Shown here piece after piece: positions 43,998 through 62,250 of a stretch of 64,000 nt of DNA. The stretch spans positions 27,404,001-27,468,000 of the forward strand of contig OZ286463.1 of NCBI GenBank assembly GCA_965644265.1, written 5' to 3'. The stretch's first letter is position 1. Each line of letters opens with the position of its first letter. A program made the translations under genes and the position numbers. Source of the DNA: Glycera tridactyla (Eukaryota). The notes beneath the pieces were generated by a model. It made no database searches and was not told the DNA's origin. It saw only the letters and a program-made list of their open reading frames with translations.

Positions 43998-44915
43998 TCA
44001 GATCGCAGGAAACCAGTTACCCAATATTTGACCAATTATCGATATTGCAAGGCCCTGATTTCCGTACTTATTCAAATGAATCCTATCTGGTTGAAACATT
44101 CCACACAGAATATCTCCGTGTTTGCATGGTTTTCTTCTACCAATAGGAAGGGATTGCAAATTTTGTGTTGTGTTGTTTGTCTTGTGTGTTTTCACAAATA
44201 ATTGGTGAGTATTGAGAACCTTGACAGTATGTACAGACATAGGTGGATTTTGTCTTTTACGAATAAAGTTGTCCACCCATACTGCCAAGGCTCTGGCCTC
44301 ATCACCCCATACTGGTCTCCATGTGATAGGTATTGTACATAGTTTAGATTCTGGAAACTCCTTTCTCAATAGTGCAAGCACTGTAATAACATCATGTACA
44401 ATCTTATTGAAATTTGTGATTCTCAGTGCTCTAATCTCCCTCATCAAAATTCTAGGATCCCTGGTTCTATTTGTCAAATTGTTCACTTTTTGGTTGTAGC
44501 GATCAATGTCATTCGATCCCAGAACAAGCACTATGTAGTTTGGATTTATCTGCATTTTCTTGAGCTTTGACAAGGTATTCCCATATCGATGCAGCTTCTT
44601 CAATCCATGTTTTGTCTTGCTAAAGACACCAGTCATTTCATTGGCAAAGGTACCCCATCCCGCACCACTGATGCCATAGTAGTGCCATTCTAGCAGTAGA
44701 GGTTTAATGCTAGAAGTATCTGGTAGTTCTTTTTTCACAAAATCACCCATTCTCCAAACATGACTGCTTCCCAGTATGAGAACATCCGGATGGTCATAGT
44801 TGTCAAGTAGATGGTGCCTGCGCGTTACTGGGCAAGTTGCTGATACCAGGTTCACTCGTTCCCTAGCTATATGCTCAGCCTCGTTCAGGTTTTTCTGCAA
44901 GGAAATCAAATGGGT
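43998..44915 (-). CDS. SGNH esterase ORF of the LINE (303-305 aa), with no ATG upstream of the catalytic Ser
   Basis: Block I VLILGSSHV, block II YGISGAG, block III VLVLGSNDI, block V FQPDRIHLNKYG. The ORF opens after TAG 44918-44916. The track start at 44909 is a TTG. Confidence 0.88.
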   Translation of the reverse strand, partial: THLISLQKNLNEAEHIARERVNLVSATCPVTRRHHLLDNYDHPDVLILGSSHVWRMGDFVKKELPDTSSIKPLLLEWHYYGISGAGWGTFANEMTGVFSKTKHGLKKLHRYGNTLSKLKKMQINPNYIVLVLGSNDIDRYNQKVNNLTNRTRDPRILMREIRALRITNFNKIVHDVITVLALLRKEFPESKLCTIPITWRPVWGDEARALAVWVDNFIRKRQNPPMSVHTVKVLNTHQLFVKTHKTNNTTQNLQSLPIGRRKPCKHGDILCGMFQPDRIHLNKYGNQGLAISIIGQILGNWFPAI

Positions 44916-45428
44916 CTATATAGAACTCTTATTTAACAATCTTAGGGTACATAATCATTTTTTACATCTAGAAGAGACGATATTTATTAATATATAAACA
45001 AATTTAAATTATACTAATACATGTCTACGTTATAGTGTATTCCATGTATTACATCAATTTTCCATTCTAGATATTAATCCAGTAGCAATTGGTCTAGATA
45101 TGACTTTAAGTGTTATATGATATGGTTAAAGGTTCATTGTTACTCTCGCTCTTTCAGCATGTGTAGCTGTATTTACAAGAGAAATATAAGGTGACACGCG
45201 CACGTGTGCGCGCCACGTGCTTAACCGTGATAAATTTCTCTCATACGAGCAATAGTCGCACTATACATACTGCCGCAATGACTTACTACATTGACGAAGC
45301 CCTGAAGACGATCTATATGTCTACGTTCGGTGATATAACGTGTCGTGGATGCCATAATGTAGAGAAAACAACGAAGAATTAATCTAATAGTCTGTCCGCT
45401 TTCATTTCCGGTGATGGTCTGTTCGAAG

Positions 45429-47474
45429 CTATTGCTTACGTCCACCGCGATTTGAACCGCGGTTTCGCCTTCCGCGAACTGTTCGAAAATCATCAGCCCG
45501 TGATACCGAACCATTTACCTGCTCCTCTCCTGAATTTTGTACTAGGCTAGGAAATTCTTCTGGATCTAGGAAATAAGATTCTATTCCTTTAGTTTTCTTA
45601 TATTTTGATTTATTTTCTAAATTAGTTTTTTCTTTTCCTGCTATGCGAGTTCTAATATTTTTCAGTGAAATTGCTATATCCTTTATATCCTTTACAGGTT
45701 CAGAATTTTCTCCCTCCACTGTTTTATGATCAGTGGTTAGAGTAGCATCATGTGCTTTTGTAGTATCATTCTCTGGGGTTTCTTTCTCAAGGGCTTGTGC
45801 CTCATCCCTTACTGTCAGCTCATTAGTGTTATGACCTCCCTTATTTATTGCACTCAAGAGTGATTGATCATTAGTTAACAAAATCTTTGGCAGCTCCCTT
45901 CCATGCGAGACAAAAACTCTCCCATCCTGCGTCCATACGTTACTTAGCAACCCTTTGCCTTTGGCATCTTTGGCAGAATGGAATAGCTTAGCCTCCCAGG
46001 GAGTGAGTTGCTCCCTTAAGAAATATTCTGTTCCCCTCAATTTTGCTTTCTGCTTCAAAATTTGCCTTCTAAGTTCAATAGTTGATGCCCTGATTTTTAC
46101 TGAACGTGGTCGATTTTCACGCACAGGCCCATACCTGACAACTTGACATATATCACCCACTCTTAATTTTAGATCAGTTTCCTTGTTAAAGAATTCAATC
46201 ACATGATCATGTAAGGTGGTGTTCTTGTTTACAGGTAGACCCTCTATTATGACAACATTCATTCTTTCAATTTTCTGCAATGCGTCAACATCATATTCTG
46301 TCTGGTCAATGCGATCATGGTGTTCACTCACTAACAGTGATATCTGACCTAGGGCTTCTCGAACATTATCCATAAACCCTTCATCACCATACGTTGGTGT
46401 CTCTATGGTGGCAATGTCCCTCTTTAGTTCAATCAGTTCTTGGTTAACAGATGCTGACATCATGGCTAGTTCATTTCCAAGAGTCTTGATTTCTTTTTGT
46501 TGTTTTTCCACCACTTGTACTAGTTGCTGATGTTTAGTGAGAAGTTCAGCCTTACAGCGCATTGTGCTGTGATTTACAGAGGTCTCTACGTAGTTCTCCA
46601 TCTCTGTCTTGAAGCGATACTCAACCTCTGGTATAATTAGTTCCATATTTTGTTGAACATGTTGATATGCATGTCGCTGTAGATACTCAGATGAAATTGT
46701 TTCAATTTCATGTTTTTCGCTACCCACTGGGATAATGCTTTGGGATAAGTGATATTGTACCTTGTCTGATATTATTCTACTGAAGGTATTGGACTCCAAG
46801 TAGGCATTTACTCCCACTTTTATACTCAGTTCCAAAGCAGTCTCGGGAGTTGTAGCATGAACCTCAACACTTGCCGCAGCTGCCAAATACTCATCACCAT
46901 TTGTCGTGGATTTCATCATTACTATATCCTGTAATACACCACTTGGAGGTATTGATTCACCATAATCACCAACAGATTTAATAGTGACAGATTCATCGGG
47001 GATATAGCAAGATGCATTTGTTGTCACTTTATTCTGAGCATCTGGAACGGTTTCCTCATCATCGGTAACACACGTGTTTTTGTGGCGCGCACGTGTTGCG
47101 ATTCCTGCTATTGAAAGCCCCGTGTCATCTTCGGCTGTCTTCGTAACTTCTCGGTCTGGGCACTCCGACTCGTCACCCTCTTCCTCGCTTTGTATGGCAA
47201 ACGATTCAAAATGGCTTGATTCACTCGACGTTGTTTCTAGTTGACTTATAGTATCCATTTTCTTCTGTGTGGAGACCATATTCAGTTCTGATTCATTGAA
47301 TGATTCGTGAATATCATCAAAAGAATCAACTCTCGCAACCTGATTCATTGACGTGCTTAGTTTTGTTCTTTTGTCTTCTAAAATAGACGTATCGCTATCG
47401 GGACTTAGAACACGCTTGTTTCCAGTATCAGCGACTACCGGCGTACCAACCTGTCCACACTCTACGTTCGACAT
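45429..47474 (-). CDS. LINE ORF1: acidic disordered N-terminus, coiled coil, L1-ORF1p/Transposase_22-like RRM and CTD (681 aa from the ATG at 47474)
   Basis: Coiled coil KHQQLVQVVEKQQKEIKTLGNEL. RRM NVVIIEGLP...RYG...RPRSVKIR. CTD YFLREQLTP...VWTQDGRVFV. Basic tail. The track start at 47486 is a TTG. Confidence 0.88.
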   Translation of the reverse strand: MSNVECGQVGTPVVADTGNKRVLSPDSDTSILEDKRTKLSTSMNQVARVDSFDDIHESFNESELNMVSTQKKMDTISQLETTSSESSHFESFAIQSEEEGDESECPDREVTKTAEDDTGLSIAGIATRARHKNTCVTDDEETVPDAQNKVTTNASCYIPDESVTIKSVGDYGESIPPSGVLQDIVMMKSTTNGDEYLAAAASVEVHATTPETALELSIKVGVNAYLESNTFSRIISDKVQYHLSQSIIPVGSEKHEIETISSEYLQRHAYQHVQQNMELIIPEVEYRFKTEMENYVETSVNHSTMRCKAELLTKHQQLVQVVEKQQKEIKTLGNELAMMSASVNQELIELKRDIATIETPTYGDEGFMDNVREALGQISLLVSEHHDRIDQTEYDVDALQKIERMNVVIIEGLPVNKNTTLHDHVIEFFNKETDLKLRVGDICQVVRYGPVRENRPRSVKIRASTIELRRQILKQKAKLRGTEYFLREQLTPWEAKLFHSAKDAKGKGLLSNVWTQDGRVFVSHGRELPKILLTNDQSLLSAINKGGHNTNELTVRDEAQALEKETPENDTTKAHDATLTTDHKTVEGENSEPVKDIKDIAISLKNIRTRIAGKEKTNLENKSKYKKTKGIESYFLDPEEFPSLVQNSGEEQVNGSVSRADDFRTVRGRRNRGSNRGGRKQ

Positions 47475-47879
47475 GTCTACTTCCAAAGTTATTGTGTGAT
47501 ATAATTACTCCATATCTCATTTCGTATGTCTTGAACATCTATAATCCAATTAATCCCCTGTTCCCAGGTATCTCATGTGTGTATCAGTCCATTTACAACA
47601 TCGTACAGTTATCCATTACGCAGGTACACAGCTTGTAATTCCCCGGAACATTCACGGCCGTGTTTACCCGTCAGCCATCTTGTTGCCATATATATATGCA
47701 TGTATGTGAAAAAAACTGTAGTACCATGCAAACTCCTATACTTTCACCTCTACCTCCCCTCACATCCTTTCTAACTCTCCCCTATCTGATTCTTCCTTTC
47801 CACCTGTATTTGCTCATCCTCCATTTCACCCCACCCAGTTCATCTTCTCATTTGCCACCCACTCCTCTGCCCACCTATT

Positions 47880-50203
47880 TAGAAAATAGACAATTGACAA
47901 TAGAAAAAACTTTATTTAATTTTAGACAGGGTGGCCTTACAAAGATAAACGACCTTTAAGAATACAAGTATAACCCAACATATATACACACAAAACAACA
48001 CAAGCGAAACAGCTGACCCTACTTTACAACTATATAAGATAATCGTGGTTTACAGTCCATACCAGGATCCAAAATCCTATCCTTCCTGTGACGAGTACAC
48101 ATATAAGATTTTCGAGGTAATCATTGACCAACAAAATGAGATCATGACATACTGGGCGGTAGAGACAATTCACATATACAAACTTCACCATATCAAATAA
48201 TATCCGTGGCGATGAATGAACCATATGATTCTGTCACAAAATTTCGGCGATCATAATAAATGTAAACTTTGAGCAGCTTCCGAGAAATAAAATATTTGAG
48301 TCAAGGATCTAGAATCTAGAAACTAGAGTCCAGAGTCCAGAGTCTGGGGTCATCTGACAACACCATATGGCTTGTCAAATGATGATGCACAAGTTTCACT
48401 GATCAATTAAGTGAAAGATTGAGTAAATGACTGCTGTATCATATGAGATACATTATACCCGCAGTGAGAGTCAGAAGCCAGACGTCAATACCCAAATTGA
48501 AGACACCGGTGATGCAAGGAACATATAATATATCTTAATCTGGGTTCACCTGACAACACCAAATGGCATGTCACGTGGCGATGATCAAGTTCCCTCGAGT
48601 AAATAAGTGAATTAATGAGTGAGTGGCCGCTGTCATAAATAAAATACATTATCACCAGGTAAGTCTAAATCCAGATATGCAGCATTATCAAGAAAATCAG
48701 TGACATAGTAATACAAGGAAAATAGAGTCATGGAACCAAATGTGCCTGACTTATATTCGAATCACAAGAGTAGGCAATTAATGAGTGACCACAGAGGGCA
48801 CGATGCCTAAGCACATGGTACACAGTTACAAGTTGGACTGTCTCGAGAAATATAGCCGATATTGCTTTCAAAAGTCATGAGTGGCAACCTCTAGAGCAGG
48901 ATATAAGCAAAAAGATAGCCCGCAGCGCCATCTGTGGGAGCGGAGCCCTTTTCACACTCATTATGGGTAGCAAAAGGAATTATCTCTCATAGAACCTCTT
49001 TAGATTGGACTTAAAACTGGCAATTGAGCCGGCAGTCCGTATTCTAATGGGAGCGTATTCCACATGGCACCACATGCAATGAAAAAGTTACTATCAACAA
49101 TCCTCAATTTGGTCTTTGGGATCCTTAAAAGCTCAGCACTATCAGATCTAGTGATGCGAGATGTTCTCATCTGGTAAATAAGAGTACTTAAACCTACTTA
49201 GTTCTGTAAGGCGCTTAGATCAATTACCACTTGATATGTTATAAAGTTCCCAGAGTCCATGTATTTCCCTTCGTTTTGCAATATCAGTGAGGCCACTTTC
49301 ATCTAATAATTTGGCCGACGATGTGCTCATGTCTTCACATAGGACAGCCCGCAAGCAATTATTGTGAGAGACCTTACTTTTCTGCTGATCACTGAGGCCC
49401 AGTAGTAGGATATCCGCGTAATCAAAGAGAGGCGTGATCAATGCTTGTGCCAGATGTTTAGCGAGCTTTGTGTCAATGTGGCTACGGACATGCCACAGAA
49501 GGCCAGTGCGAGATTTGACTTTTTTAACGACACTATCAACATGATTCGAGAATGATATTTGAGGATCAAGTTTAACCCCTAGATATTTAAAACAAGATAA
49601 TCTCTCGGACCCCAGGACATGATTGATATCAGAAGTCATACTAGCAAGCTTCTGTCGAGTGCCAAACTGCATGTATTCAGACCTGTCCCGGTTCAGCGTA
49701 AGCCGATTGCATGAAAACCAGCGATCAAGTGCAAGAATATCTGGCTCTAATCTAGCAACAATTTCCTCTTCACATGTGCCTGTTGCAAGGATAGCGGTAT
49801 CATCCGCATACATGTAGACTTGATAATATTTGACCAAATTCAGCATATCATTAATATATAAAACAAAAAGGAGGGGTCCATTCTGACACTCCAATGTCCA
49901 CAAGTCTAGAGTTAGAAGATTCAGAGCCAAACTTGGTGCACTGGCGACGTCCATACAGATAAGACTCAAACCATGAAACAGCAGAGTTTCTAAAACCAAG
50001 TAATTTCAGTTTCTTAAGAAAAAGATTGTGATCCACAGTATCGAAGGCCTTAGCCAGGTCCAGGAAGACCACACCACAGCCAAGCCCTTTATCCATATTG
50101 TCATAAACGGTATTACAAAAATCAATCAAACAGCCAACAGTGGAGTGGTTCTTCCTGAAACCCGACTGGGCCTCCGATAACAATTCATACTTAGCTAGGT
50201 AGG
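47880..50203 (-). mobile_element. 5'-truncated CR1 copy (frameshifted RT 3' half and ~1.1-kb 3'UTR) with an 8-bp TSD
   Basis: LLSEAQSGFRKNHST, LDLAKAFDTVDH, YADDT, KYLGV and MWNTLP (~49030). Tail aaataaagttttttctattgtcaattgtctatt. TSD cacctatt at 47872-47879 and 50204-50211. The UTR contains a ~197-bp degenerate duplication (48343 and 48540). Confidence 0.88.
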
Positions 50204-50809
50204 CACCTATTGCCTTTCATCACTCACCAACTTGAACTCTCGCCCCCACTCTTTCACCTCATACCTCTCACACCCTCTATTCACTCCCAACTTCATCTTG
50301 TTCGTTGCTTTCAATGTTCCCAATTGTTCAATGTTCCTGCCAGTGATCTCTTCTTGAAAATTTTATATGAAAACATCAGCATGTAACTTGACCCTCGTCG
50401 TCTCATGTCTCTTGTTTGATAAAGCATATCTTATCTTATCTCATCTCATCTAAATATGGGGGGTAATGGCTGCCAGTAGGTGCAAAAATTGGCACAAAGT
50501 TAATAAAATCTCAGCTTACAGAGCACTTGCAGCAACCAAAAAAGTTTTTTCCGTAGAAGGATAGTTTTGCTCAGAAAAAGACCAAGCAAGACCAAATCAG
50601 TTCCACATGAGCGGAGATTCTGGCGCCACAACATTTTGGGGATCCAGTATCATATTATAGATTGTGTACCACCAATGGGTTACTTTCAAGTCCTACCTAT
50701 CCCAACAACATTTGAGTTCAATTTTATCAGATATGGATTGTTTTGGGTTTGCCTGGAATCACCATATATGAATGTGAATTATAAATGTGTTATTTTTTCT
50801 GTTATATAG

Positions 50810-53329
50810 GTCAAATTGCTTGGCGGAGGTAGAAGAGGGAGAGAAAGAAGAGTTCATTTGGAAGAGCTGGCAATGATCATCATTGCAACTTGCGAGGAAA
50901 ATAACATCGTACACTTGAACAGCGACATGCTTATGGCTGATGTAGTATCAGAATATAATTGCTTGAGTAGGGAGATGTATGCATTCAGGAAGCCGCTCAC
51001 ATTCAAGTATTTGAAGTTGATGTATAGTGATAAATCTCATCCACTGCATGGTATTGTCAGAGATAAATGGCCCACAATCACGGATGATGTTGAACCTCTG
51101 CATCATTCACAAGATGATGTTGAAGGTTCAATCCATGGCATCAGCGTCAGTGAGGTGCCTGGTCATATACTGTGTGAAGCTGAACCTCACAAAGATAGGG
51201 CCTCTGACCCAAGTGATGCTGAGCATATTGAAAATCCTTGTGGAGATGCAGTTGCTCCAGCTGAGTACAACCAGCCACTGTTGCAATTAAATGAAAGCAT
51301 TATGACCACTGGTTTTGATGGGGGGCAAGGTCATATGAATTTGAGGAGATCAAGTGTGACTGAGGGACAACAAGATCGTCAAACTGTGCATCATCGCTCA
51401 CAGTATTGTGTTGATGCTGACAATACCAATCAAAGGGAATTCTCTAGCAAAGTTGAGCAGTCATTTGGGGATATATTTTCATCGACACAGACCCTTCCCA
51501 TTTCACCCATACCAGAAGGTATACCTGGCCACATTAGTCACCCAAGTAACTCTAATTTTGGTAATTATGTTTCCTCGAAAACTGATCACTTGAAATTGCA
51601 GGTACATAAACTAAGAATATGCACTGGTTTCGATAGTGGCCATGGCCATTCATGCGAGTTTACTAGCAGTAACAATTTGAATCAAGTACACCAGATTGGA
51701 TCTATGCATGGATCATTCTCATTGACTGATAATCGCAATTGCCAAGGTGGTGATATTCATGCTTTGCGTAATCACATAGTATTATCCAAAGTATGTGCTC
51801 CGACCAATAGGCAGAGAGGGACTCATTCAGATGAGGTCTGTTATACTGCTCAAACTGATATACAATGTAATACCATGGCAACCACTTCAGATTTGAATGT
51901 TCAGGCCCTGCATGATATCATCTCTGACCGTAATGAGACAAATTTATCCTCCGAGTTTGCTGAACAAGATACTGCCCACACTGACATTGTTTGCAGCATC
52001 ACTTCGAAACCTATTGTGATTTCTAATCTTGGGCAGTCTCACACACATTCAGCTACATCATCAGAATCTTTGTCAATCAGTGGAAGTTGTACTGCCGATA
52101 CACACTGTGCAAATCTGGATATAGATAACTTATCCAATGATATTCCTGCCACAAGTAGTCTTGATAATATAGAGTTTAAGTCACATATAGATCAGAAAGA
52201 ATTCGTGACTGCTTCTATCCCACATGGCATCAATTGTGTCATGAAGGAGAAAGCAGGTTTTCATGAGTACAGCCTTCAGGTGGATTCACAAAGCAGTGAC
52301 AATGTTGGTAAATCCATGGACACCCATGTGGATGACATCAGGTCAGTGCTATCAGGTGAATGTGATCGCCCAAATGAGTTACAGGTTGATCAAAAGGAAG
52401 ATGATACTGCCAACACTGACATTGTTTGCAGCATCACCTTAAAACCTATTGTGATTTCATATCTTGGGCAGTCTCGCACACATTCAGCTACATCATCAGA
52501 ATCTTTGTCTATCAGTGGAAGTTGTACTGCCGATACACACGGTGTCAATCTGGATATAGATAACTTATCCAATGATATTCCTGCCACAAGTAGTCTTGAT
52601 AATATGGAGTTTAAGTCACATATAGATCAGAAAGAATTGGTGGCTGCTTCTATCCCACATGGCATCAATTGTGTCATGAAGGAGAAAGCAGGTTTTCATG
52701 AGTGCAGCCTTCAGGTGGATTCACAAAGCAGTGACAATGTTGGTAAATCCATGGACACCCATGTGGATGATATCAGGTCAATGCTATCAGGTGAATGTGA
52801 TCGCCCAAACGAGTTACAGGTTGATCAAAAGGAAGATGATATCAAAAGGTCCGAAGGCTTTATTGTAGGTAACACAATAACTCATCAGTCTGTTGGCTGT
52901 GTACAGGTATTTAGCCAAACAAGGGAAAATATGATCGCTTTTTTATCAACTGGTTCCCTCAATACAGTCTTCGATATTGATGAGAGTTGTCGAATGATAG
53001 AAAATATCATAAGCCCTATCAAAACAAAGATGAGTGACAAACACTTTTCATTATTTACCCAACTTCGCAAAGTAGGTAGCAGATACTTGCCTCGAGGGAA
53101 ATGGGAATTTATGTTCAGTGAGTTATTAGAGCAAAGTAATAAGCTCTGTACATTTTCATTCTGCAATCATTATGTTTCTGTTGCCAAAACAAATCAATCT
53201 CATCTTTTCACATGTCGTGCAAGATGTTCATATAGAGGGTGTGATGTTAATGCTAGTATGGCATTGAAAAATAATGGAGTTATTGACATTGCATTCAAAG
53301 GTAGGCTTGGACATATTGACAAAAACTAA
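50810..53329 (+). CDS. N-terminal part of the giant MULE-type transposase reading frame (disordered region, 145-aa duplication, first zinc-ribbon module), ending at an in-frame TAA
   Basis: Preceded by the acceptor ttattttttctgttatatag| at 50809. Same frame as 53396-59254. It contains YLPRGKWEFMFSELLEQSNKLCTFSF...CRARCSYRGC...GRLGH, homologous to two modules in the next ORF. Confidence 0.8.
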   Translation, partial: VKLLGGGRRGRERRVHLEELAMIIIATCEENNIVHLNSDMLMADVVSEYNCLSREMYAFRKPLTFKYLKLMYSDKSHPLHGIVRDKWPTITDDVEPLHHSQDDVEGSIHGISVSEVPGHILCEAEPHKDRASDPSDAEHIENPCGDAVAPAEYNQPLLQLNESIMTTGFDGGQGHMNLRRSSVTEGQQDRQTVHHRSQYCVDADNTNQREFSSKVEQSFGDIFSSTQTLPISPIPEGIPGHISHPSNSNFGNYVSSKTDHLKLQVHKLRICTGFDSGHGHSCEFTSSNNLNQVHQIGSMHGSFSLTDNRNCQGGDIHALRNHIVLSKVCAPTNRQRGTHSDEVCYTAQTDIQCNTMATTSDLNVQALHDIISDRNETNLSSEFAEQDTAHTDIVCSITSKPIVISNLGQSHTHSATSSESLSISGSCTADTHCANLDIDNLSNDIPATSSLDNIEFKSHIDQKEFVTASIPHGINCVMKEKAGFHEYSLQVDSQSSDNVGKSMDTHVDDIRSVLSGECDRPNELQVDQKEDDTANTDIVCSITLKPIVISYLGQSRTHSATSSESLSISGSCTADTHGVNLDIDNLSNDIPATSSLDNMEFKSHIDQKELVAASIPHGINCVMKEKAGFHECSLQVDSQSSDNVGKSMDTHVDDIRSMLSGECDRPNELQVDQKEDDIKRSEGFIVGNTITHQSVGCVQVFSQTRENMIAFLSTGSLNTVFDIDESCRMIENIISPIKTKMSDKHFSLFTQLRKVGSRYLPRGKWEFMFSELLEQSNKLCTFSFCNHYVSVAKTNQSHLFTCRARCSYRGCDVNASMALKNNGVIDIAFKGRLGHIDKN
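51968..52837 (+). repeat. In-frame 435-bp (145-codon) tandem duplication inside the transposase N-terminus
   Basis: gatactgcc(c/a)acactgacattgtttgcagcatcac...gatcaaaaggaagat at 51968 and 52403, with few differences. Confidence 0.95.
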
Positions 53330-56300
53330 AGCATTACAGAAGCTGAATCAGTCACTCAATTTCAAGCATATTCCAACCATCCTGCGAGCAAGCATGTGGC
53401 CAAAGTTTCTCAGGGAACAACTGGTGAATCACCTGTTGGAACTGATCATAATGCAATACCCAAGAATAAAAAAGATGCTCATGGTGATGAATTTCAATGT
53501 TCATCAGGGACACAGCCTTTGTGTTGTCCTGACCGAAATGTATTTGAAATGAAGCAGGTCGTAATTGAATTTCTTTCTACAGGCTGTTTCGACTATGGTA
53601 TCATTATTGATGATGTTTTCTCGATGATAGAAAATGTTCTCCCTCTTGTTGTGACCCAGATGAGAAGAAAAGATCATGACTATCTCATGAGATCATTCAA
53701 AGGTCTCGGTTCATTTCACATTCCAAAGGCGAAATGGCAATCAATAATTCACAGTCTTGTATTTGAAAGTAATACAGTATGTGATTTCTCTTTCAGCAGT
53801 TATCGAATGCCTACAGCACAAAGGGCTCATGACAATTTTATTTTAGAGAGTAGAGGAAAGTGTTCCATGAGGACATGTGGGGTTTCTGTATTGGTCAGAG
53901 TGAGAAAAGGAGGCCAGGCTGAGATCAGTTATGAAGGCAGAATTGGCCATGGGATTCCAAAACAAAGTGCCAGCTCAATTTTGCAGAGTCTTAGCTCCAC
54001 AACAGAGAGATATTCCAATGATAATGAAAGAAAATCACAGAGTGATCACATATCTAGTGAACTGTCCATCACTCATCAGAGTTGTGATGAGGTGGAAGCT
54101 GATAGTCTACCAACATCAAAAAATAAACTCGGCAGTATGAGAAGGATTCCTGCAGATAATTCTGATATGGAAGTCTTGTCTCCACCTGAAGAAACAAATC
54201 AAACAACTTGTAAAGATATAGATTCTAAAATGAAACAGGCTATGCTTGACTATTTGGCAACTGGACATATTGATGATAGCATTGATATCAATAACACTTT
54301 CTTGATGATAGAGAATCTAGTGCCAACCATGAAGACTCAAGTTTCAGACATTGATCTAACAATTCTTTTGTCTTTGAGAAAACCAGGGAGCAGATATCTT
54401 CCTAGAGGGAAATGGGAGTATATGTTTGTTGAGCAGCTGAAAAAAAGTAATAAGTTGTGTTCCTTCGTTTTCAAGGAAAATTATATATCAGTAGCAGTGA
54501 AGCAGAAAAAAAAGGTTATTTTCACATGTAAAGCTTTTTGCAAGCATGGAAATTGCTCGGTGAGTGCTCTCATTCGTCTTGAAATGGATGGCACTGTGGA
54601 TATATCTTACAAAGGCAGAATTAAGCATGATAGTAAAGCTATCCATGCAAGACCCATTCGTTCTCCAGAGCGATTGAAACTATATTCAGAGTTCAAGTCA
54701 GGTATATCCCCAAGTAAAATGTATCATGATAAATTATCAAGAAAAGATGATGATGAATTGCTCCATGGTAATTTGGATGGAATAGGTATCACCCAATCGG
54801 TTATGCAGAAAATCTCATCAGAGTCAAAGGTCGATGGTCAAATAGATCAGAGCATCTTTTCCAGGCTATGTATGATGAAACAGCAGTCAGAAACACTGTC
54901 GAAAGGGAGGAAGGTAATTGGAGATATCCAATATGTTTCTATGGACCCAACTATTGTGATAATTCTTAGTGAATCAGGTCTCAATATCTGGCATAATAAT
55001 GTTAAAAATGATTATGTATTCCTTGATTCTACCGGAAGTGTTGCAAAGGCATTACCAAACAAGAGCAGTTTTCTTTATTATGAAATTTGTGTTCGCAATA
55101 GAGATATTAAACAACCCAACATACCTATTGCGGGGATGGTTACAAATGACCAGTCAGAGTTTGCTATGACTCAGTTTCTGAATAAGCTTATTCATTGTCA
55201 GAAGAAGATGTTTGGATTTTTGGCAGTTAGGCTCCCATTACAAATCAGAATCGACAGATCATATGTCCTTCTAGCCTCTATTCTCAAAGCTTTCAATAAT
55301 GAAACTATAACAGATTTTGCACTGCGAAGTTACAGGATAATAACAGGATGTGCAGAAGGAGATGACCTCAAGAAAGTTAATCCTTCTGCATGCATTGCTC
55401 ATACCATGAATTCTTGGAAACATCATTCCAAAACTCGTTACACTGGTGATATATCATTCATTATGTTTGCATTCAGTATATTGGCATCATCTACCTCCTT
55501 AATGGAATATAACACAAATTTGTACAATTTCTTTTATGTATTGCTCTCCGAATATAACACTCATTCAACAGCAATGTATAGCCAAAAACTCTTATCATCA
55601 GGCAATGACAAAACACATCAAATTTCGGAAATCATTGATAGCCATCAAGATGCTGAAGGAGTAAAAGAAGAAAACTCAGAAGAATCCTATATGAAACAGG
55701 ATCTCAAGTCTCCATTCAGAGAGTTGGCACAGAGATCGAAATATCAAGTATGTGCAGCAATTGAATCAGATAAAAGTGATGAGTTTCCAAAAAATGCGAG
55801 ACACTGCCCAGACATGATTGACTTTTTCATAAAAAACTGGTCAGCTTCGGCCCACTTTTGGTCAAATCTTGTCTGTGGGGATCTAGGCCGACATGGGAGT
55901 AGTGAAATATACAAACAGTTCACTTTTCCAATGAATGTTGGCGTACACTCATATAATGCTCATTGTGGCACCAACACTGCTGCTGAGCAGCGTTTCAATA
56001 TAATCAAAAACATCCATGCACTTGGAAGCAAAATTATGAGATTGGACGTCTTTATTCAAAATATGGTCAAACATTTCAGTGATGTCCACAAAAAGTATTT
56101 TTTCGATGATTTCAAACGAAGTAATACAAAATTATTAGAAGAGAAATGGGGTAAAAAGAAGACAAAAACAAAGCGTAAAATTGGATTTTATCAGGGCACT
56201 CCAAAGAATGTGAGCATTTTGAAACAAACAAAAAAGATGCGAATAGACTCAGATTCAATCAACTCAGAAGTGACTTGCATGCAGGGGTCAGATGTCAAGA

Positions 56301-59254
56301 GAGTTGCAGAAGATGTTCCTCTCAGTACCAAAAAGCAACGAGTAACTCCCTCTGTGACTCAATATTTGGCACAGAAAAATATTACCACAGTTGGCAGCTC
56401 ATTGCAACAGTGTTCAGAGCCGAAGTTCATACAGTTATGCAATATAGCACAAAATTGCTGGTTTAATGCCATATCCCAGGCATTCATTGGTACCACTTTG
56501 ATAAAGACTTTTCTTGAGAGAATCTCATATATAGTTGATTTAACTAGTCTGTTTCATATGAAATACAAAAAAGTATTCTGGCTCTGGAGCAATATGTTGA
56601 AGGGAAAACATATACCTGCTAGTGAGATGGAGAGCGTATTAGCAAGCCTTGCTGATAGAGGAATCATGGGTAACAATTATTTCAAATTTGGCCATCAACA
56701 TGACGCACATGAAGTTGTAACCACATTGATAGATCGCTGCATTGAAGAATGTGGTGAGCATTTTTCTCTTGACATTTTACACCAGTCACAATGTAGCACG
56801 TGTGAAACTCAATCAATACTTGATGTTCAGACTGTCAGTAATCTATCACTGACTATCCCTGTTCCAAGAAAAAATTTAAGAAAAATCTCAGTATCATCTC
56901 TTCTTGATGAGTATCTTTTGGAGAAAACACCTATGCAAACAAAGTGTAACATCTGCAATACACATTTGAAGAAAAAAATGAGTTTTTTGAATGCCCCGGA
57001 AATATTAATCTTCCATATTAAAAGGCATGATTTGGGTCCAACTGGGATACAGAAAAATCGGACAAGTGTGTATTTCGAAGAAATTCTGCATATACAGGAT
57101 TTTGAATACCGGATACATAGTGTTGTAAGACATAAAGGGACAGACCTACATAGTGGACATTATGTTTGTTATGTCCACCAAAATGATAATTTTTATAGAT
57201 TAGATGATGACAGGCGACCTGAAATTGTGTCAGCATTAGATTCCATTTATGAGGAGGCATACATCTTGGTCTACACTAGATTCGATCCTGATCGCAATCT
57301 GTCATCTTTGCCTAGCTGTGTTTCTTCTTTTCTATCGCTGGCATCATACAATAAACTAATCATTGAAGAAGTAGAATCTCAGTTGAAACATGGATGCCTG
57401 TCTCCAAATGTCACTGTCTTCTTACAGTCTCTCTTTCATGGCAAGATTGAGATTGGACATTTACAATTTCTGTTAGGATATCATGGCATCCGTGACATCA
57501 GAAATCTGAACTTATGGACATTTGTTGACTTCTTATTTACAAAGTTGCTACACAGTAGTAAGATTTTCACCTTTAAGATCCATCACAAAATATCTTGTCT
57601 GATTTGCGAATGCAAGCATGATTTGATAGCAGCAATTTCTATGATATCATGCACAAACCTAGCTACACCACCCAGGGACTTTTTTGAGCAGCAAATCCGT
57701 ACATCATCTAAACCCAATTGTCATGATAATTTCAGGATAACGGATTCATATTGCATAAGCCCATCAAAAATGATCATGATCTATTATGAGACGATGGATA
57801 AGTTTGATATCTCAAATTTGAAGCAGCTGAATTTTAGTAATTTGTCACAAAATATGTATGAGGTATGTTATACACTTACAATGTGTCTCCTGTGTGAAAT
57901 GGAATGTGTCAAGTGCTTAGTTGAAGAAAATGGTGAATACAAGGAATATGTCAATGGAAAGCTCAGCGATATTGAGATGTCATCTTTTGGTTCCAACAGT
58001 AGTGCCCTTCTATTCTACGAGTTGAATGAGACCAGTTGTTGCCATGACATTAAGGTAGAAATACCTATTGACATGAATGAGTATATTCGTGTATCAGAGG
58101 AGAATGTAGACCTTTTTACAATCGATGAAAAGCTGTCAGCATTAACTGATGACTATGTTGATGAAATATGTGCATTTAATCAAACCATGTATTTCCATGA
58201 TATGAAGATTCTGCTGTATGGGGGAGATCTCACAAGTAGCATCATCAACATGTTCATCACTTTTATTGCTTCGATTGCCAAACTAGACAGAATCATAGTA
58301 TGTACATCTCTGGACTTTTCCCGAATCCAACAACAAGAGTCTCCAAAGTATGAACAGGGAGATTTTTGGATGAAAAGTGATTTTGTTTGCATCCCGGTTA
58401 ATATATCACAAGGACAATTCAGGCATTGGGTCCTACTTTTTGTATGTCTGTCTGAGAGATATGTGATGTACTTCGATTCGTTGTCTGGTTATGATGCTAG
58501 TATTTCTGAGGCCTTGTTCAAGCAATTGTCTTATGAAAAGTTTCTTATGAATGAGCAGTTTGACAGGAATATGTGGAAAGTAATCAACATGTCAAAACAT
58601 CCGACCTTCCCATTACAGAGAGATTCACACAGCTGTGGTGTTTATGTCTGCATGATTGCTGAATGTCTGTTGACATTTAAGGATTTCCCTTTGACCATCA
58701 GACAACAAGACTTGGATTCCTATAGGATTAAAATACTATCCCTCTTAGTGAATCAGAGTAATTTACAAACGACTAAGCTAGTCAGGAATATCAAGGATAT
58801 TTTCATGGTTGCAGAGTTTGTCGAATATCATTCGCACAAGATAGCAACACTATTCATTCCAAGCATTGCTGATAAGTATATTTCAAAGATAAAGCCATGG
58901 CATCAACGGCACAATATTATGATGTCCAATCCTGTCCACTTCAGAAAAGCTAAACTGGAAGGCTTTGCCAAGTATTACATTGCCGATGATGTCATTGATA
59001 CAATTGCTGACATCATAGAGAGATGTGTGACTCACAAATTTTCCCAGGGTATATTTTCATTAGCAACATCCCATCTCAATATCGATGGGTGTGATCTGGT
59101 TAATAACAGATTCACAAATGCGGAGTTTGCTTCCTACTTGACGGATGTCCTGACAAAGGAAATTTTGATCCTGATGTTTCGGGTGCAATGTGGCATACAG
59201 TATGTCAGGATAAACAATTTATTTTGTGCATCTGAAATATCGCTAGCACAATAG
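53330..59254 (+). CDS. Mutator/MULE (NOF-like) DDE transposase fused to a USP (peptidase C19) domain and a Ulp1 (peptidase C48) domain
   Basis: Transposase: FLDSTG (D at 55025), IRIDRS (D at 55253), ACIAH (CxxH at 55391-55402), TNTAAEQRFNIIK (E at 55985). USP: CNIAQNCWFNAISQ (C at 56456), QHDAHE, CSTC/CNIC fingers, HKGTDLHSGHYVCY (H at 57158), LDDD. Ulp1: HWVLL (H at 58424), YFDSL (D at 58475), QRDSHSCGVY (C at 58634). The frame is open from 53330. Confidence 0.88.
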   Translation, partial: SITEAESVTQFQAYSNHPASKHVAKVSQGTTGESPVGTDHNAIPKNKKDAHGDEFQCSSGTQPLCCPDRNVFEMKQVVIEFLSTGCFDYGIIIDDVFSMIENVLPLVVTQMRRKDHDYLMRSFKGLGSFHIPKAKWQSIIHSLVFESNTVCDFSFSSYRMPTAQRAHDNFILESRGKCSMRTCGVSVLVRVRKGGQAEISYEGRIGHGIPKQSASSILQSLSSTTERYSNDNERKSQSDHISSELSITHQSCDEVEADSLPTSKNKLGSMRRIPADNSDMEVLSPPEETNQTTCKDIDSKMKQAMLDYLATGHIDDSIDINNTFLMIENLVPTMKTQVSDIDLTILLSLRKPGSRYLPRGKWEYMFVEQLKKSNKLCSFVFKENYISVAVKQKKKVIFTCKAFCKHGNCSVSALIRLEMDGTVDISYKGRIKHDSKAIHARPIRSPERLKLYSEFKSGISPSKMYHDKLSRKDDDELLHGNLDGIGITQSVMQKISSESKVDGQIDQSIFSRLCMMKQQSETLSKGRKVIGDIQYVSMDPTIVIILSESGLNIWHNNVKNDYVFLDSTGSVAKALPNKSSFLYYEICVRNRDIKQPNIPIAGMVTNDQSEFAMTQFLNKLIHCQKKMFGFLAVRLPLQIRIDRSYVLLASILKAFNNETITDFALRSYRIITGCAEGDDLKKVNPSACIAHTMNSWKHHSKTRYTGDISFIMFAFSILASSTSLMEYNTNLYNFFYVLLSEYNTHSTAMYSQKLLSSGNDKTHQISEIIDSHQDAEGVKEENSEESYMKQDLKSPFRELAQRSKYQVCAAIESDKSDEFPKNARHCPDMIDFFIKNWSASAHFWSNLVCGDLGRHGSSEIYKQFTFPMNVGVHSYNAHCGTNTAAEQRFNIIKNIHALGSKIMRLDVFIQNMVKHFSDVHKKYFFDDFKRSNTKLLEEKWGKKKTKTKRKIGFYQGTPKNVSILKQTKKMRIDSDSINSEVTCMQGSDVKRVAEDVPLSTKKQRVTPSVTQYLAQKNITTVGSSLQQCSEPKFIQLCNIAQNCWFNAISQAFIGTTLIKTFLERISYIVDLTSLFHMKYKKVFWLWSNMLKGKHIPASEMESVLASLADRGIMGNNYFKFGHQHDAHEVVTTLIDRCIEECGEHFSLDILHQSQCSTCETQSILDVQTVSNLSLTIPVPRKNLRKISVSSLLDEYLLEKTPMQTKCNICNTHLKKKMSFLNAPEILIFHIKRHDLGPTGIQKNRTSVYFEEILHIQDFEYRIHSVVRHKGTDLHSGHYVCYVHQNDNFYRLDDDRRPEIVSALDSIYEEAYILVYTRFDPDRNLSSLPSCVSSFLSLASYNKLIIEEVESQLKHGCLSPNVTVFLQSLFHGKIEIGHLQFLLGYHGIRDIRNLNLWTFVDFLFTKLLHSSKIFTFKIHHKISCLICECKHDLIAAISMISCTNLATPPRDFFEQQIRTSSKPNCHDNFRITDSYCISPSKMIMIYYETMDKFDISNLKQLNFSNLSQNMYEVCYTLTMCLLCEMECVKCLVEENGEYKEYVNGKLSDIEMSSFGSNSSALLFYELNETSCCHDIKVEIPIDMNEYIRVSEENVDLFTIDEKLSALTDDYVDEICAFNQTMYFHDMKILLYGGDLTSSIINMFITFIASIAKLDRIIVCTSLDFSRIQQQESPKYEQGDFWMKSDFVCIPVNISQGQFRHWVLLFVCLSERYVMYFDSLSGYDASISEALFKQLSYEKFLMNEQFDRNMWKVINMSKHPTFPLQRDSHSCGVYVCMIAECLLTFKDFPLTIRQQDLDSYRIKILSLLVNQSNLQTTKLVRNIKDIFMVAEFVEYHSHKIATLFIPSIADKYISKIKPWHQRHNIMMSNPVHFRKAKLEGFAKYYIADDVIDTIADIIERCVTHKFSQGIFSLATSHLNIDGCDLVNNRFTNAEFASYLTDVLTKEILILMFRVQCGIQYVRINNLFCASEISLAQ

Positions 59255-61200: not shown

Positions 61201-61799
61201 TTGTGATGACAGATGCTTGTTTTTTTCTAGATGTTCTAAAAGTGCACTACGAGCTGATAATTATTGAAATAATCTTTTTCTCATCTTGCTAGTCTACCAT
61301 CTTTTCTCTTCTTTGCTTTCCCTCTTCCTTTTCATTCATTTCAGATTCCAACAATTTTGATTATAGAAATTGGCCCAGTATTGAATGTGTCCTGATGTGG
61401 AATCTGCAATTTTCCTAAAGGTAGTTGACAAAAATTGTGTTCATGACCCAGCCATTAAATTTTCCACCCGGGTTCCCAAGATTGCTCAGTACTGCAATTT
61501 TCAAACACATATACATCAATCAGTCTGCAGTCAACTGTGCTGAACTGTCCTTAACATCCACGATATTTTCCTTCCCTTTTTCATGACAGCGGGCTGGCAG
61601 GCAAACTGACATCTGACATCTGGTTACATATTTGAAACATATTTGACTTTCGAAAAAATATTCTACCCCAACTTTTCTATTGAGCTAGAATTGAAATGTT
61701 GATAATGTTTACACTCAATTTGTCTGAGACCTCCAATGCCTTAGAGAGAGAAATTTGTGATTTTTTGAATCATCCATGATAGTTTATTTCTTTCTTTCA

Positions 61800-62250
61800 C
61801 AAGGTACAGCAAAGTTGCTGGTATATGGATTCCAGAAGAGTTGGAGTCCTGGACAGACTCAAGGGTGTTTTGAGTGAAAGACCTCCCTAATGCTGTACGG
61901 GGCTCTCAACCTTCCAAATTTCAATTATTGTGACATTTTTCATGGTTATTTAGGTTTGATAGACTCAATGAAACTCCAGCGAGTCCAAAAAAAAGCTGTG
62001 AGAATAACAACATGCAGCCCAAGATTTACAAGTAGCTTGCAATTCCACAGTCAGTCGGTTTTGCCATTCCTGTCACACCTAGTGTTTTGCGAACAAGATT
62101 CTGTCCGAGATTATGCACAAGCAATATTTTGATTTGTCTGAGCTTCCTCCTGAGAATATTGATTACAAATTGAGAACCAGGAACTCTCTTCATGGGACGA
62201 TGCAGCTCGATTAATTTACCATATGTGAGGGGAACATTTTGAAGTCTAAA
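61800..62250 (+). mobile_element. 3' ORF2 fragment of a CR1 closely related to the full-length element
   Basis: RVGVLDRLKGVL...MLYGALNLPNFNYCDIFHGYLGLIDSMKLQRVQKKAVRI matches RVGVLGRLRGVL...MLYKSLILPIFDYCDIVYDSLGVADSMKLQRVQNKAFRI of ORF 39492-42419. Confidence 0.85.

What the first reader, a model, noticed from the sequence alone, without database searches (positions are those of the whole stretch)
50810..59254. Giant MULE-type transposase fused to both a USP deubiquitinase and a Ulp1 SUMO/NEDD8-type protease
Seen: one frame carries, in order, a D-D-(CxxH)-E core (FLDSTG / IRIDRS / ACIAH / TNTAAEQRF), a USP domain with Cys box (NCWFNAISQ), QHDAHE box, zinc fingers and His box (HSGHYVCY, LDDD), and a C48 domain with H-D-C triad and oxyanion Gln (HW / FDS / QRDSHSCG). 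All catalytic residues are present. Known: CxxH plus TNxxxE defines Mutator-superfamily transposases, and the DxTG variant resembles NOF/Foldback-type proteins. Ulp1 capture is known in plant MULEs, Phantom and Zisupton elements, and OTU capture in Ginger elements. I do not know of a described element fusing a USP and a Ulp1 to the transposase. Inference: the transposase may strip both ubiquitin and SUMO marks (for example from silencing or repair factors, or from itself) at its target sites.
Basis: partly seen in the sequence, partly recalled or inferred. Interest (0 to 1): 0.92.

Follow-up and report, generated by a model that had tools for sequence, protein, structure and literature searches.

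The report
NOF/Mutator transposase with USP and SENP proteases
A 1,952-codon intron-free reading frame encodes a Foldback/NOF-type Mutator transposase fused to a ubiquitin-removing and a SUMO-removing protease; this layout recurs in many unnamed animal-type database proteins, but I found no paper describing it.

Summary
Frame 2 of the + strand carries every listed motif in the stated order, inside one uninterrupted ORF (53396-59254, 1,952 codons). An in-frame TAA at 53327-53329 cuts off an upstream 837-codon ORF, so 50810-59254 is not one continuous ORF.

Pfam confirms the UCH/USP domain (E 6e-26) and Peptidase_C48 (E 2e-16). The nearest solved structures are USP36/USP21 and SENP1, and all catalytic residues are present.

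No Pfam model hits the transposase core. A confident AlphaFold model (pLDDT 83) is nonetheless an RNase H-like DDE fold. Its best matches are ISCth4 (IS256 family), Drosophila NOF, FAR1/FHY3, ZSWIM and MULE clusters. So the core belongs to the Mutator superfamily, NOF/Foldback clade. WRKY-like zinc-finger modules precede it, in three copies here.

The core-USP-C48 order is colinear in at least 11 relatives that are only 25-33% identical, and their protease catalytic residues are nearly invariant. This is an old, selected architecture, not a local accident.

No terminal inverted repeats or target-site duplications were found here or in relatives, so mobility is not demonstrated.

The scan's notes list a similar 8.4-kb stretch elsewhere in this genome (unchecked).

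No paper describing MULE+USP+Ulp1 was found. Protease function is inferred only.

The parts
50816..53329 (+). Upstream ORF A (837 codons, first ATG at 50873), same frame as ORF B, ended by TAA at 53327-53329. The N-terminal ~690 residues have no detectable relatives and hold an in-frame 435-bp tandem duplication (51962-52841). The C-terminal end is zinc-finger module 1.
52916..53326 (+). WRKY-like zinc-finger module 1, cut off from the rest by the TAA five codons after its conserved His.
53396..59254 (+). ORF B, 1,952 codons without a stop. The first ATG is codon 51 (53546), exactly at the start of zinc-finger module 2. It carries ZnF2, ZnF3, DDE core, USP, middle region, C48 and tail.
53546..53950 (+). 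WRKY-like zinc-finger module 2.
54209..54628 (+). WRKY-like zinc-finger module 3. This is the copy shared with all relatives, directly upstream of the core. Conserved positions are W, N, C, C-x4-C and H.
54683..56275 (+). DDE transposase core (residues 430-960). D544 lies on beta1, D620 just after beta4, C666-x2-H669 after beta5, then an all-alpha insertion domain, and E864 lies on the following helix. A basic cluster (56153-56179) looks like a nuclear localisation signal.
56435..57277 (+). USP/UCH deubiquitinase domain (residues 1014-1294) with N1016, C1021, H1255 and D1270/D1271, plus CxxC...CxxC zinc-ribbon fingers.
57281..58162 (+). Middle region (residues 1296-1589), colinear with relatives. 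It is possibly a degenerate second USP-like domain without catalytic residues. The evidence is weak.
58163..58795 (+). Ulp1/SENP-type C48 protease domain (Pfam part 58361-58735) with H1677, D1694, Q1741 and C1747.
58796..59254 (+). C-terminal tail (about 150 residues plus stop). No family hit, but it aligns with the tail of relative P0003.

Best explanation
This is a copy of a DNA transposon of the Mutator superfamily, NOF/Foldback-like clade. Its single giant intronless gene encodes a multi-enzyme transposase. In order it has: WRKY-type zinc-finger DNA-binding modules (one in relatives, triplicated here); an RNase H-like DDE catalytic core with the CxxH motif and an alpha-helical insertion domain; a catalytically complete USP deubiquitinase; a conserved middle region; and a catalytically complete SENP/Ulp1-type protease that is probably SUMO-specific.

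Shown: the domain identities, the catalytic residues, the fold assignment, and the conservation of the whole layout and of the protease active sites across relatives only 25-33% identical.

Inferred: the zinc fingers bring the protein to the element's own ends or chromatin, and the DDE core cuts and pastes DNA. The two proteases then act locally for the element's benefit. The most likely action is removal of SUMO and ubiquitin marks that host silencing or DNA-damage signalling deposit there, or protection of the transposase itself from degradation.

This particular copy has lost continuity with its N-terminal ORF through one stop codon. It keeps an intact 1,902-residue protein from the first ATG, which carries the complete set of domains shared by the family. 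Its ends could not be located.
For: Pfam UCH and Peptidase_C48 score far above their cut-offs. SENP1 is the best solved relative of the C48 domain, with H/D/Q/C aligned. USP36, USP21, USP15 and USP8 are the best solved relatives of the USP domain.

A full HMMER scan of 1.84 billion representatives with the core found 597 relatives. The core alignment has invariant D, H and E and at least 90% conserved D and C.

The AlphaFold model (pLDDT 83, pTM 0.78) places D/D/E on beta1, after beta4 and on the post-insertion helix. Structure matches are: ISCth4 (IS256 family) first in PDB by Foldseek and by VIA-align at Z 12.7; Drosophila NOF first in Swiss-Prot (E 3.5e-19, TM 0.67), followed by FAR1/FHY3/FRS, K. 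lactis alpha3, ZSWIM1/3/9 and IS256-family transposases; AFDB clusters at TM 0.7-0.77 named MULE, USP, ULP or NOF; Atlas NOF and MULE clusters.

The same core-USP-C48 order is found in P0003, P0007, P0012, P0016, P0019, P0032 and others. Of 20 relatives of at least 1,300 aa, 17 carry a protease, and these fall in one clade of the core tree. Protease catalytic residues are conserved in relatives: USP Cys 16/16 and His 14/14; C48 His, Gln and Cys 15/15.

The zinc-finger module model matches WRKY and AFT2 DNA-binding domains. The ORF is intronless, sits among LINE debris, and the scan notes a second, similar 8.4-kb stretch in the same genome (unchecked).
Against: No terminal inverted repeats or target-site duplications were found around the gene within the window, nor around relatives L001-L003. 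Pfam MULE PF10551 does not hit the core, and only one of 42 relatives reaches E 0.093. Copy number in this genome could not be measured with these tools. The in-frame TAA at 53327 shows at least some decay or a changed gene structure. No experiment bears on protease substrates. The zinc-finger fold match is weak (Foldseek E 0.015-0.09, VIA Z 5.5-6.2).
Confidence: 0.65

Rival explanations
1. This is a domesticated host gene derived from a NOF/MULE transposon. The transposase-protease protein is kept for a cellular function, for example as a chromatin-targeted deubiquitinase/deSUMOylase, and is no longer mobile.
For: No TIR or TSD was found here or around three relatives. The ORF is very long and intact, with all catalytic residues. 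Mutator transposases are often domesticated; FAR1/FHY3, ZSWIM and K. lactis alpha3 all appear among the fold matches.
Against: The gene is intronless and lies among LINE fragments. An in-frame stop removes the N-terminal ORF. A second, similar stretch in the same genome is noted by the scan (unchecked). The DDE triad and CxxH are intact, which is less expected after domestication. Relatives are numerous, patchy and often fragmentary.
Confidence: 0.15
2. The element is a transposon, but the two proteases serve mainly to process the giant polyprotein in cis. Viral clan-CE proteases cut precursors after Gly-Gly in this way. On this reading they do not edit host ubiquitin or SUMO marks.
For: Clan CE (adenain, ASFV and poxvirus proteases) and USPs cut after Gly-Gly (established knowledge). 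The protein is unusually large and multi-domain.
Against: ORF B holds only two Gly-Gly pairs, at residues 172 and 1609. Both lie inside folded domains and none lies in an inter-domain linker. No ubiquitin-like domain was detected. The C48 domain is closest to the SUMO-specific SENP1, SENP2 and Ulp1.
Confidence: 0.08
3. The locus is an inert, decaying relic. The copy is dead and the apparent integrity of ORF B reflects only youth, so nothing functional happens here today.
For: There is an in-frame TAA between ORF A and ORF B. No ends were detected. A 5'-truncated LINE fragment lies 0.6 kb upstream and may have removed the 5' terminus.
Against: ORF B has 1,952 codons without a stop or frameshift, every catalytic residue is intact, and an ATG sits exactly at the start of a domain. 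This reading concerns the state of this copy and does not change what the family is.
Confidence: 0.25

Closest known systems
NOF protein of the Drosophila FB-NOF (Foldback) element, UniProt P16320, and NOF-like proteins
   Same: It is the best Swiss-Prot structural match of the core (E 3.5e-19, TM 0.67 over residues 10-531 of the core piece). The Atlas cluster named after NOF carries Peptidase_C48 in 45% of members and a PHD finger in 34%. Relatives of the window protein also carry PHD fingers.
   Different: Sequence identity is only about 16%. NOF is 1,056 aa, and no USP domain is recorded for its Atlas cluster. Foldback elements have long, internally repetitive inverted termini, and none was found here.
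Mutator-like elements (MULEs: MuDR, Phantom/Muta, Hop/Jittery) and their bacterial cousins, the IS256 family
   Same: Shared features are the DDE fold with a CxxH motif and an alpha-helical insertion between beta5 and the Glu helix, and a WRKY/FLYWCH-type N-terminal zinc finger. ISCth4 (IS256 family) is the best solved structure. MULE-annotated clusters are the nearest in the Atlas. Ulp1 capture is known in plant, hydra and lancelet Mutator elements (PMC2836005).
   Different: Pfam PF10551 does not detect the core. No TIR or 9-bp TSD was seen. A USP domain is not reported for MULEs in the surveys I could read (PMC6446971, PMC13359780).
Rehavkus group (Repbase only; treated as sister or outgroup of MULEs)
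   Same: [quoted passage not shown] Relatives P0003, P0019 and P0032 have PHD fingers. Relative loci L002-L004 have a ~187-bp minisatellite about 2.6 kb after the ORF.
   Different: Neither a PHD finger nor a minisatellite is present in the window copy.
Other protease-bearing transposons: Zisupton (Ulp1), Ginger1 (OTU or Ulp1), Helentrons (OTU, VTD), and the Trichomonas IS5-like transposase fused to a C19 peptidase
   Same: Here too a transposition protein is fused to a ubiquitin or ubiquitin-like deconjugating cysteine protease (PMC2836005, PMC9741609).
   Different: The transposase classes differ. No KDZ/Zisupton Pfam model appeared among the families that hit the 42 core sequences, and the nearest fold is MULE/IS256. 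Each of those elements is described with one protease type, or OTU+VTD in Helitrons, not USP plus C48 on a Mutator core.

Membership tests
Mutator superfamily (MULE) transposase | RNase H-like DDE fold closest to IS256/MULE transposases | tested here: met
   The model has pLDDT 83. ISCth4 is first in PDB by two aligners, with Z 12.7. NOF, FAR1/FHY3, ZSWIM and IS256 transposases are first in Swiss-Prot.
Mutator superfamily (MULE) transposase | D, D, E triad with a C/DxxH motif between the second D and E | tested here: met
   D544, D620, C666-x2-H669 and E864. In 42 sequences D620, H669 and E864 are invariant, and D544 and C666 are at least 90% conserved. Their positions on beta1, after beta4, after beta5 and on the helix fit the fold.
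Mutator superfamily (MULE) transposase | Match to Pfam MULE domain PF10551 at the curated threshold | tested here: not met
   There is no hit for the window core even at E up to 10. One of 42 relatives reaches E 0.093.
Mutator superfamily (MULE) transposase | N-terminal WRKY/GCM1-type (FLYWCH/FAR1-like) zinc-finger DNA-binding domain | tested here: inconclusive
   The model has pLDDT 81. WRKY domains top Foldseek with probability about 1 but E 0.015-0.09. VIA gives AFT2 Z 6.2 and WRKY1 Z 5.5, below the tool's caution line of 8. The C-x4-C...H pattern is conserved. No Pfam hit.
Mutator superfamily (MULE) transposase | Terminal inverted repeats and 8-11-bp target-site duplications | tested here: not met
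   No TIR was found between the flanks. A brute-force search for TSD plus TIR gave nothing above chance. None was found in relatives L001-L003. Ends may lie outside the window or be atypical.
Mutator superfamily (MULE) transposase | Multiple dispersed copies in the genome | not testable with these tools
   There is only one copy in the window. The scan's note s1-340403 reports a similar 8,439-letter stretch on another piece, unchecked.
Foldback (FB-NOF) elements | Long terminal inverted repeats built of tandem subrepeats | tested here: not met
   No tandem arrays or long inverted repeats flank the gene.
USP/UCH deubiquitinases (peptidase C19) | Pfam PF00443 above the gathering score, with Cys box, QxDxxE box and His box (Asn, Cys, His, Asp/Asn) | tested here: met
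   92.1 bits against a cut-off of 23.9. N1016, C1021, H1255 and D1270/1271 are present. The domain aligns to USP36 and USP21. These residues are conserved in relatives.
Ulp1/SENP proteases (peptidase C48, clan CE) | Pfam PF02902 above the gathering score, with the His-Asp-Cys triad and oxyanion Gln | tested here: met
   60.8 bits against a cut-off of 20.7. H1677, D1694, Q1741 and C1747 align with the HW / DS / Q...CG positions of SENP1; that these are the SENP1 catalytic residues rests on my knowledge. They are conserved in 14-15 of 15 relatives.
Ulp1/SENP proteases (peptidase C48, clan CE) | Enzymatic specificity (SUMO versus NEDD8 or others) | not testable with these tools
   SENP1, SENP2, Ulp1 and SENP5 are the only close solved relatives, and no SENP8/NEDP1 appears at E<0.01. 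This suggests SUMO but does not prove it.
Zisupton / KDZ transposons | KDZ transposase domain (Pfam PF18758) with CxC zinc modules | tested here: not met
   No KDZ or CxC family appeared among the Pfam families listed for the window protein or the 42 relatives. The fold matches are MULE/IS256.

The most novel reading that the evidence does not exclude
An old, widespread clade of animal Mutator/NOF-type transposons encodes its own paired erasers, a USP deubiquitinase and a SENP-type deSUMOylase, on the transposase polypeptide. The zinc fingers deliver them to the element's own chromatin. There they remove the SUMO and ubiquitin marks on which piRNA- or KRAB-type heterochromatin silencing, or DNA-damage signalling, depend. 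This would be a built-in anti-silencing or repair-steering device that has not been described for DDE transposons.
Probability: 0.25. Interest if true: 0.8.

Novelty: new variant of a known kind. Interest (0 to 1): 0.6.

Why it matters
Transposon-borne proteases of the ubiquitin and SUMO systems keep turning up: Ulp1 in plant MULEs, Ginger and Zisupton, and OTU and VTD in Helitrons. None has an established role in transposition.

This family offers a well-defined case. Two different deconjugating enzymes have been held on one DDE transposase across deep divergence, with active sites intact. That argues both activities matter to the element.

SUMO and ubiquitin are central to transposon silencing and to double-strand-break repair, so the family gives a direct handle on how a cut-and-paste element might manipulate either process. 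It would also add a clade that current Pfam models miss, and which automatic annotation labels as USP36-like or USP-domain proteins. That matters for genome annotation.

Tried and rejected
1. The word-indexed homologue search returned nothing, both with the core region inside the full-length protein and with the 42-sequence alignment. The exhaustive HMMER scan found 597 relatives, so the blanks reflect the index, not absence.

2. Pfam on the core, the zinc-finger modules, the middle region and the tail gave no meaningful hit.

3. A profile search of PDB sequences with the core alignment gave only noise.

4. Zisupton/KDZ, P-element and hAT were considered for the core. No KDZ model appeared among the Pfam hits. 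P element (Z 10.5) and Hermes (Z 8.4) score below ISCth4 (Z 12.7). Swiss-Prot matches are all Mutator-derived.

5. I tested whether an intron could remove the TAA at 53327. The only plausible GT...AG pair (53301/53413, 113 nt) shifts the frame and removes the zinc-ligand His, so this was rejected.

6. TIR and TSD searches included repeat finder, blastn with word size 7 of the sequence upstream (1-51000) against the downstream flank, and a brute-force search for 8-11-bp direct repeats followed by inverted ends. Nothing rose above chance. The single 178-bp inverted match (39847-40024 against 61835-62011) is LINE sequence.

7. I tested whether the element split a pre-existing LINE, which would have given exact ends. 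The two flanking reverse-transcriptase fragments overlap in LINE coordinates and lie in opposite orientations, so they are separate insertions.

8. Ends were sought in relatives. L002-L004 are the same locus at 99% identity including flanks, and L001 has only low-complexity inverted matches.

Single-protein scans of metagenome and viral contigs found nothing.

10. The exact-protein look-up of the window ORF found no record.

11. Polyprotein cleavage at Gly-Gly was considered. No Gly-Gly pair lies in a linker.
Full report
**What is in the sequence**

It runs 837 codons to a TAA at 53327-53329 (ORF A). The same frame then resumes and stays open for 1,952 codons, from 53396 to the stop at 59252-59254 (ORF B). 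The one correction is that 50810-59254 is not a single ORF.

The only plausible splice pair around the TAA is GT at 53301 and AG at 53413, 113 nt apart. It would shift the frame and delete a conserved zinc ligand, so the stop is real. The first ATG of ORF B is codon 51 at 53546. It coincides with the start of a folded module, so ORF B could be translated on its own into a 1,902-residue protein.

**The two proteases**

Pfam places a UCH/USP domain at residues 1014-1293 (E 5.8e-26) and a Peptidase_C48 domain at 1656-1780 (E 2.1e-16). Both are far above the curated cut-offs.

- The best solved relatives of the USP domain are USP36, USP21, USP15 and USP8. The Asn/Cys of the Cys box (N1016, C1021), the QxDxxE box, the His box (H1255) and the Asp pair (D1270/1271) are present, together with the CxxC...CxxC zinc ribbon.
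- The best solved relatives of the C48 domain are SENP1 (E 1.3e-11), SENP2, yeast Ulp1 and SENP5. H1677, D1694, Q1741 and C1747 align with the conserved HW, DS and Q...CG positions of SENP1, which I take from my own knowledge to be its catalytic His, Asp, oxyanion Gln and Cys. No NEDD8-specific SENP8 appears at E<0.01, so SUMO is the more likely substrate. This is inference.

**The transposase core**

Pfam finds nothing in residues 430-960, even at E up to 10. An exhaustive HMMER scan of 1.84 billion representative proteins found 597 relatives (246 at E<1e-10), the best only 33% identical.

In an alignment of 42 near-full-length cores, D620, H669 and E864 are invariant. D544 (in a DATGS-like motif) and C666 are conserved in at least 90% (numbers converted to ORF B).

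AlphaFold with this alignment gave a confident model (pLDDT 83, pTM 0.78). Its strand and helix order puts the first Asp on beta1, the second just after beta4, and CxxH right after beta5. An all-helical insertion follows, and the Glu sits on the next helix. This is the canonical arrangement of hAT, MULE, P and Transib-type DDE enzymes.

Structure searches agree on the family:

- In the PDB, Foldseek ranks the IS256-family transposase ISCth4 first, ahead of P element, RAG1 and Hermes.
- An independent aligner gives ISCth4 Z 12.7, P element 10.5, and integrases and Hermes about 8.
- In Swiss-Prot the first match is Drosophila NOF (E 3.5e-19, TM 0.67 over almost the whole model). It is followed only by Mutator-derived proteins (FAR1/FHY3/FRS, K. 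lactis alpha3, ZSWIM1/3/9) and IS256-family transposases.
- AlphaFold DB clusters at TM 0.7-0.77 are named MULE transposase, USP domain, ubiquitin-like protease or NOF-FB protein.
- The ESM Atlas gives NOF and PF10551 clusters.

The core therefore belongs to the Mutator superfamily, NOF/Foldback-like clade, even though the Pfam MULE model fails. Among the 42 relatives, one reaches E 0.093.

**The DNA-binding modules**

Three modules of about 135 residues precede the core, at 52916-53326, 53546-53950 and 54209-54628. They are 31-45% identical to each other. Relatives carry a single such module directly before the core, so the triplication belongs to this lineage. This agrees with the scan's separate note s1-340516.

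The conserved positions are W, N, C, C-x4-C and H. A model of module 3 (pLDDT 81) finds WRKY DNA-binding domains first in Foldseek, with probability about 1 but weak E-values. The second aligner finds AFT2 and WRKY1 first, at Z 6.2 and 5.5. That fits the WRKY/GCM1-type finger usual in Mutator transposases, but the scores are modest.

**The architecture is a family trait**

BLAST shows colinear alignment from the zinc finger through core, USP, middle region and C48. In P0003 it extends to the C-terminal tail. These proteins are only 22-28% identical to the window protein. Pfam confirms UCH plus C48 in P0003, P0007, P0012, P0016, P0019 and P0032, some with an N-terminal PHD finger.

I built family-specific HMMs and applied them to the 157 fetched proteins:

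| Domain content | Proteins |
|---|---|
| core + USP + C48 | 11 |
| core + USP (most end inside or just after the USP) | 21 |
| core + C48 | 5 |

Of 20 proteins of at least 1,300 residues, 17 carry a protease.

On a quick maximum-likelihood tree of the cores, the protease-bearing proteins and the window fall in one clade. In that clade almost every protein with an informative tail has a protease. The other clade consists of proteins that end soon after the core. The tree is midpoint-rooted and the search was short, so this is an indication only.

Catalytic residues are conserved in the relatives: USP Cys 16/16, His 14/14 and Asp/Asn 14/14; C48 His, Gln and Cys 15/15 and Asp 14/15. Conservation of both active sites at this divergence argues that both activities are under selection.

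An Atlas cluster with C48 in 100% and UCH in 83% of members also exists. The relatives come from metagenome and read-archive assemblies and carry no names.

**Is it a mobile element here?**

For:

- The gene is intronless.
- A 5'-truncated LINE reverse-transcriptase fragment lies 0.6 kb upstream on the other strand (49223-50210), and another lies at 61796-62072.
- The scan's notes list a stretch with the same description and nearly the same length on another piece of this genome (unchecked, and it could be an allelic contig).

Against:

- No terminal inverted repeats were found.
- No combination of TSD and inverted ends was found.
- There is no tandem array of the Foldback kind.
- There is no second copy in the window.
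- Three relative loci also lack flanking inverted repeats.

L002-L004 do have a ~187-bp minisatellite about 2.6 kb after the ORF. That recalls the Repbase description of Rehavkus (PHD finger, minisatellite before the 3' TIR; PMC6446971).

Ends may be atypical, lost to the LINE insertion, or outside the window. I rate transposon copy at 0.65 and domesticated gene at 0.15.

**How it probably works**

Steps shown: domain identities, intact catalytic residues, family-wide conservation.

Steps inferred:

- The WRKY-like fingers bind element DNA.
- The DDE core performs cut-and-paste. The hairpin-forming Muta1 mechanism reported for MULEs (PMC5499845) is the nearest model.
- A basic cluster at 56153-56179 would give nuclear import.
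- The USP and SENP domains deconjugate ubiquitin and SUMO near the element.

Plausible targets are the SUMO-dependent heterochromatin machinery, histone H2A/H2B ubiquitin, repair factors at the excision break, or the transposase itself. Bao, Kapitonov and Jurka suggested in 2010 that ubiquitin and SUMO pathways are involved in transposition, based on Ulp1, OTU and one C19 fusion (PMC2836005). Helitron VTD/OTU domains raise the same idea (PMC9741609).

Polyprotein self-processing is a weaker rival, because no Gly-Gly pair lies in a linker.

**Comparison with the literature and novelty**

The following are known: Ulp1 in Mutator elements of plants, hydra and lancelet; Ulp1 or OTU in Ginger1; Ulp1 in Zisupton; OTU and VTD in Helentrons; and a C19 peptidase on an IS5-like transposase of Trichomonas (PMC2836005, PMC9741609).

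Nine full-text searches, plus the MULE surveys I could read, gave no description of a Mutator/NOF transposase carrying both a USP and a Ulp1. Repbase Reports, Dfam and the Phantom paper (not held) could not be checked.

Public databases already hold many such proteins under automatic names. The window is therefore a member of an existing but apparently undescribed clade, which I rate as a new variant of a known kind.

Noticed in passing
window 51962-52841: An in-frame 435-bp (145-codon) tandem duplication, two copies 95.5% identical, lies inside the relative-less N-terminal part of ORF A. Relatives L002-L004 likewise have 30-bp and 48-bp coding tandem repeats in their N-terminal regions.
   Followed up: partly
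window 52916-54628: The WRKY-like zinc-finger module is present three times (31-45% identical), whereas relatives have one. The TAA at 53327-53329 falls five codons after the conserved His of the first module.
   Followed up: yes
window 57281-58162: The region between the USP and C48 domains may be a second, degenerate USP-like domain without catalytic Cys or His. Profile-profile comparison with the USP alignment gives probability 42%, E 2.6e-4 over 55 columns. Relatives P0016 and P0020 give a significant second USP hit there.
   Followed up: partly
window 49223-50210 (- strand) and 61796-62072 (+ strand): Two separate fragments of a LINE reverse transcriptase flank the gene. They are related at 33-51% amino-acid identity to the large LINE at 39064-47688. 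They overlap in LINE coordinates and have opposite orientation, so they are independent insertions, not one LINE split by the element.
   Followed up: yes
window 39064-47688: By tblastx, the reverse-transcriptase part of the large CR1-like LINE noted by the scan is read on the minus strand (about 39918-40736).
   Followed up: partly
L002:12026-12448, L003:17163-17620, L004:10278-11144: Loci of a relative (P0155/P0156/P0009, about 25% identical to the window protein) end in a ~187-bp minisatellite with units in both orientations, about 2.6 kb downstream of the ORF. All three contigs break there. In L003 and L004 the gene is split into two or three ORFs.
   Followed up: partly
window 50806-50816: A strong splice-acceptor-like sequence (a pyrimidine run followed by AG) sits exactly where ORF A opens. 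An upstream exon cannot be excluded.
   Followed up: no
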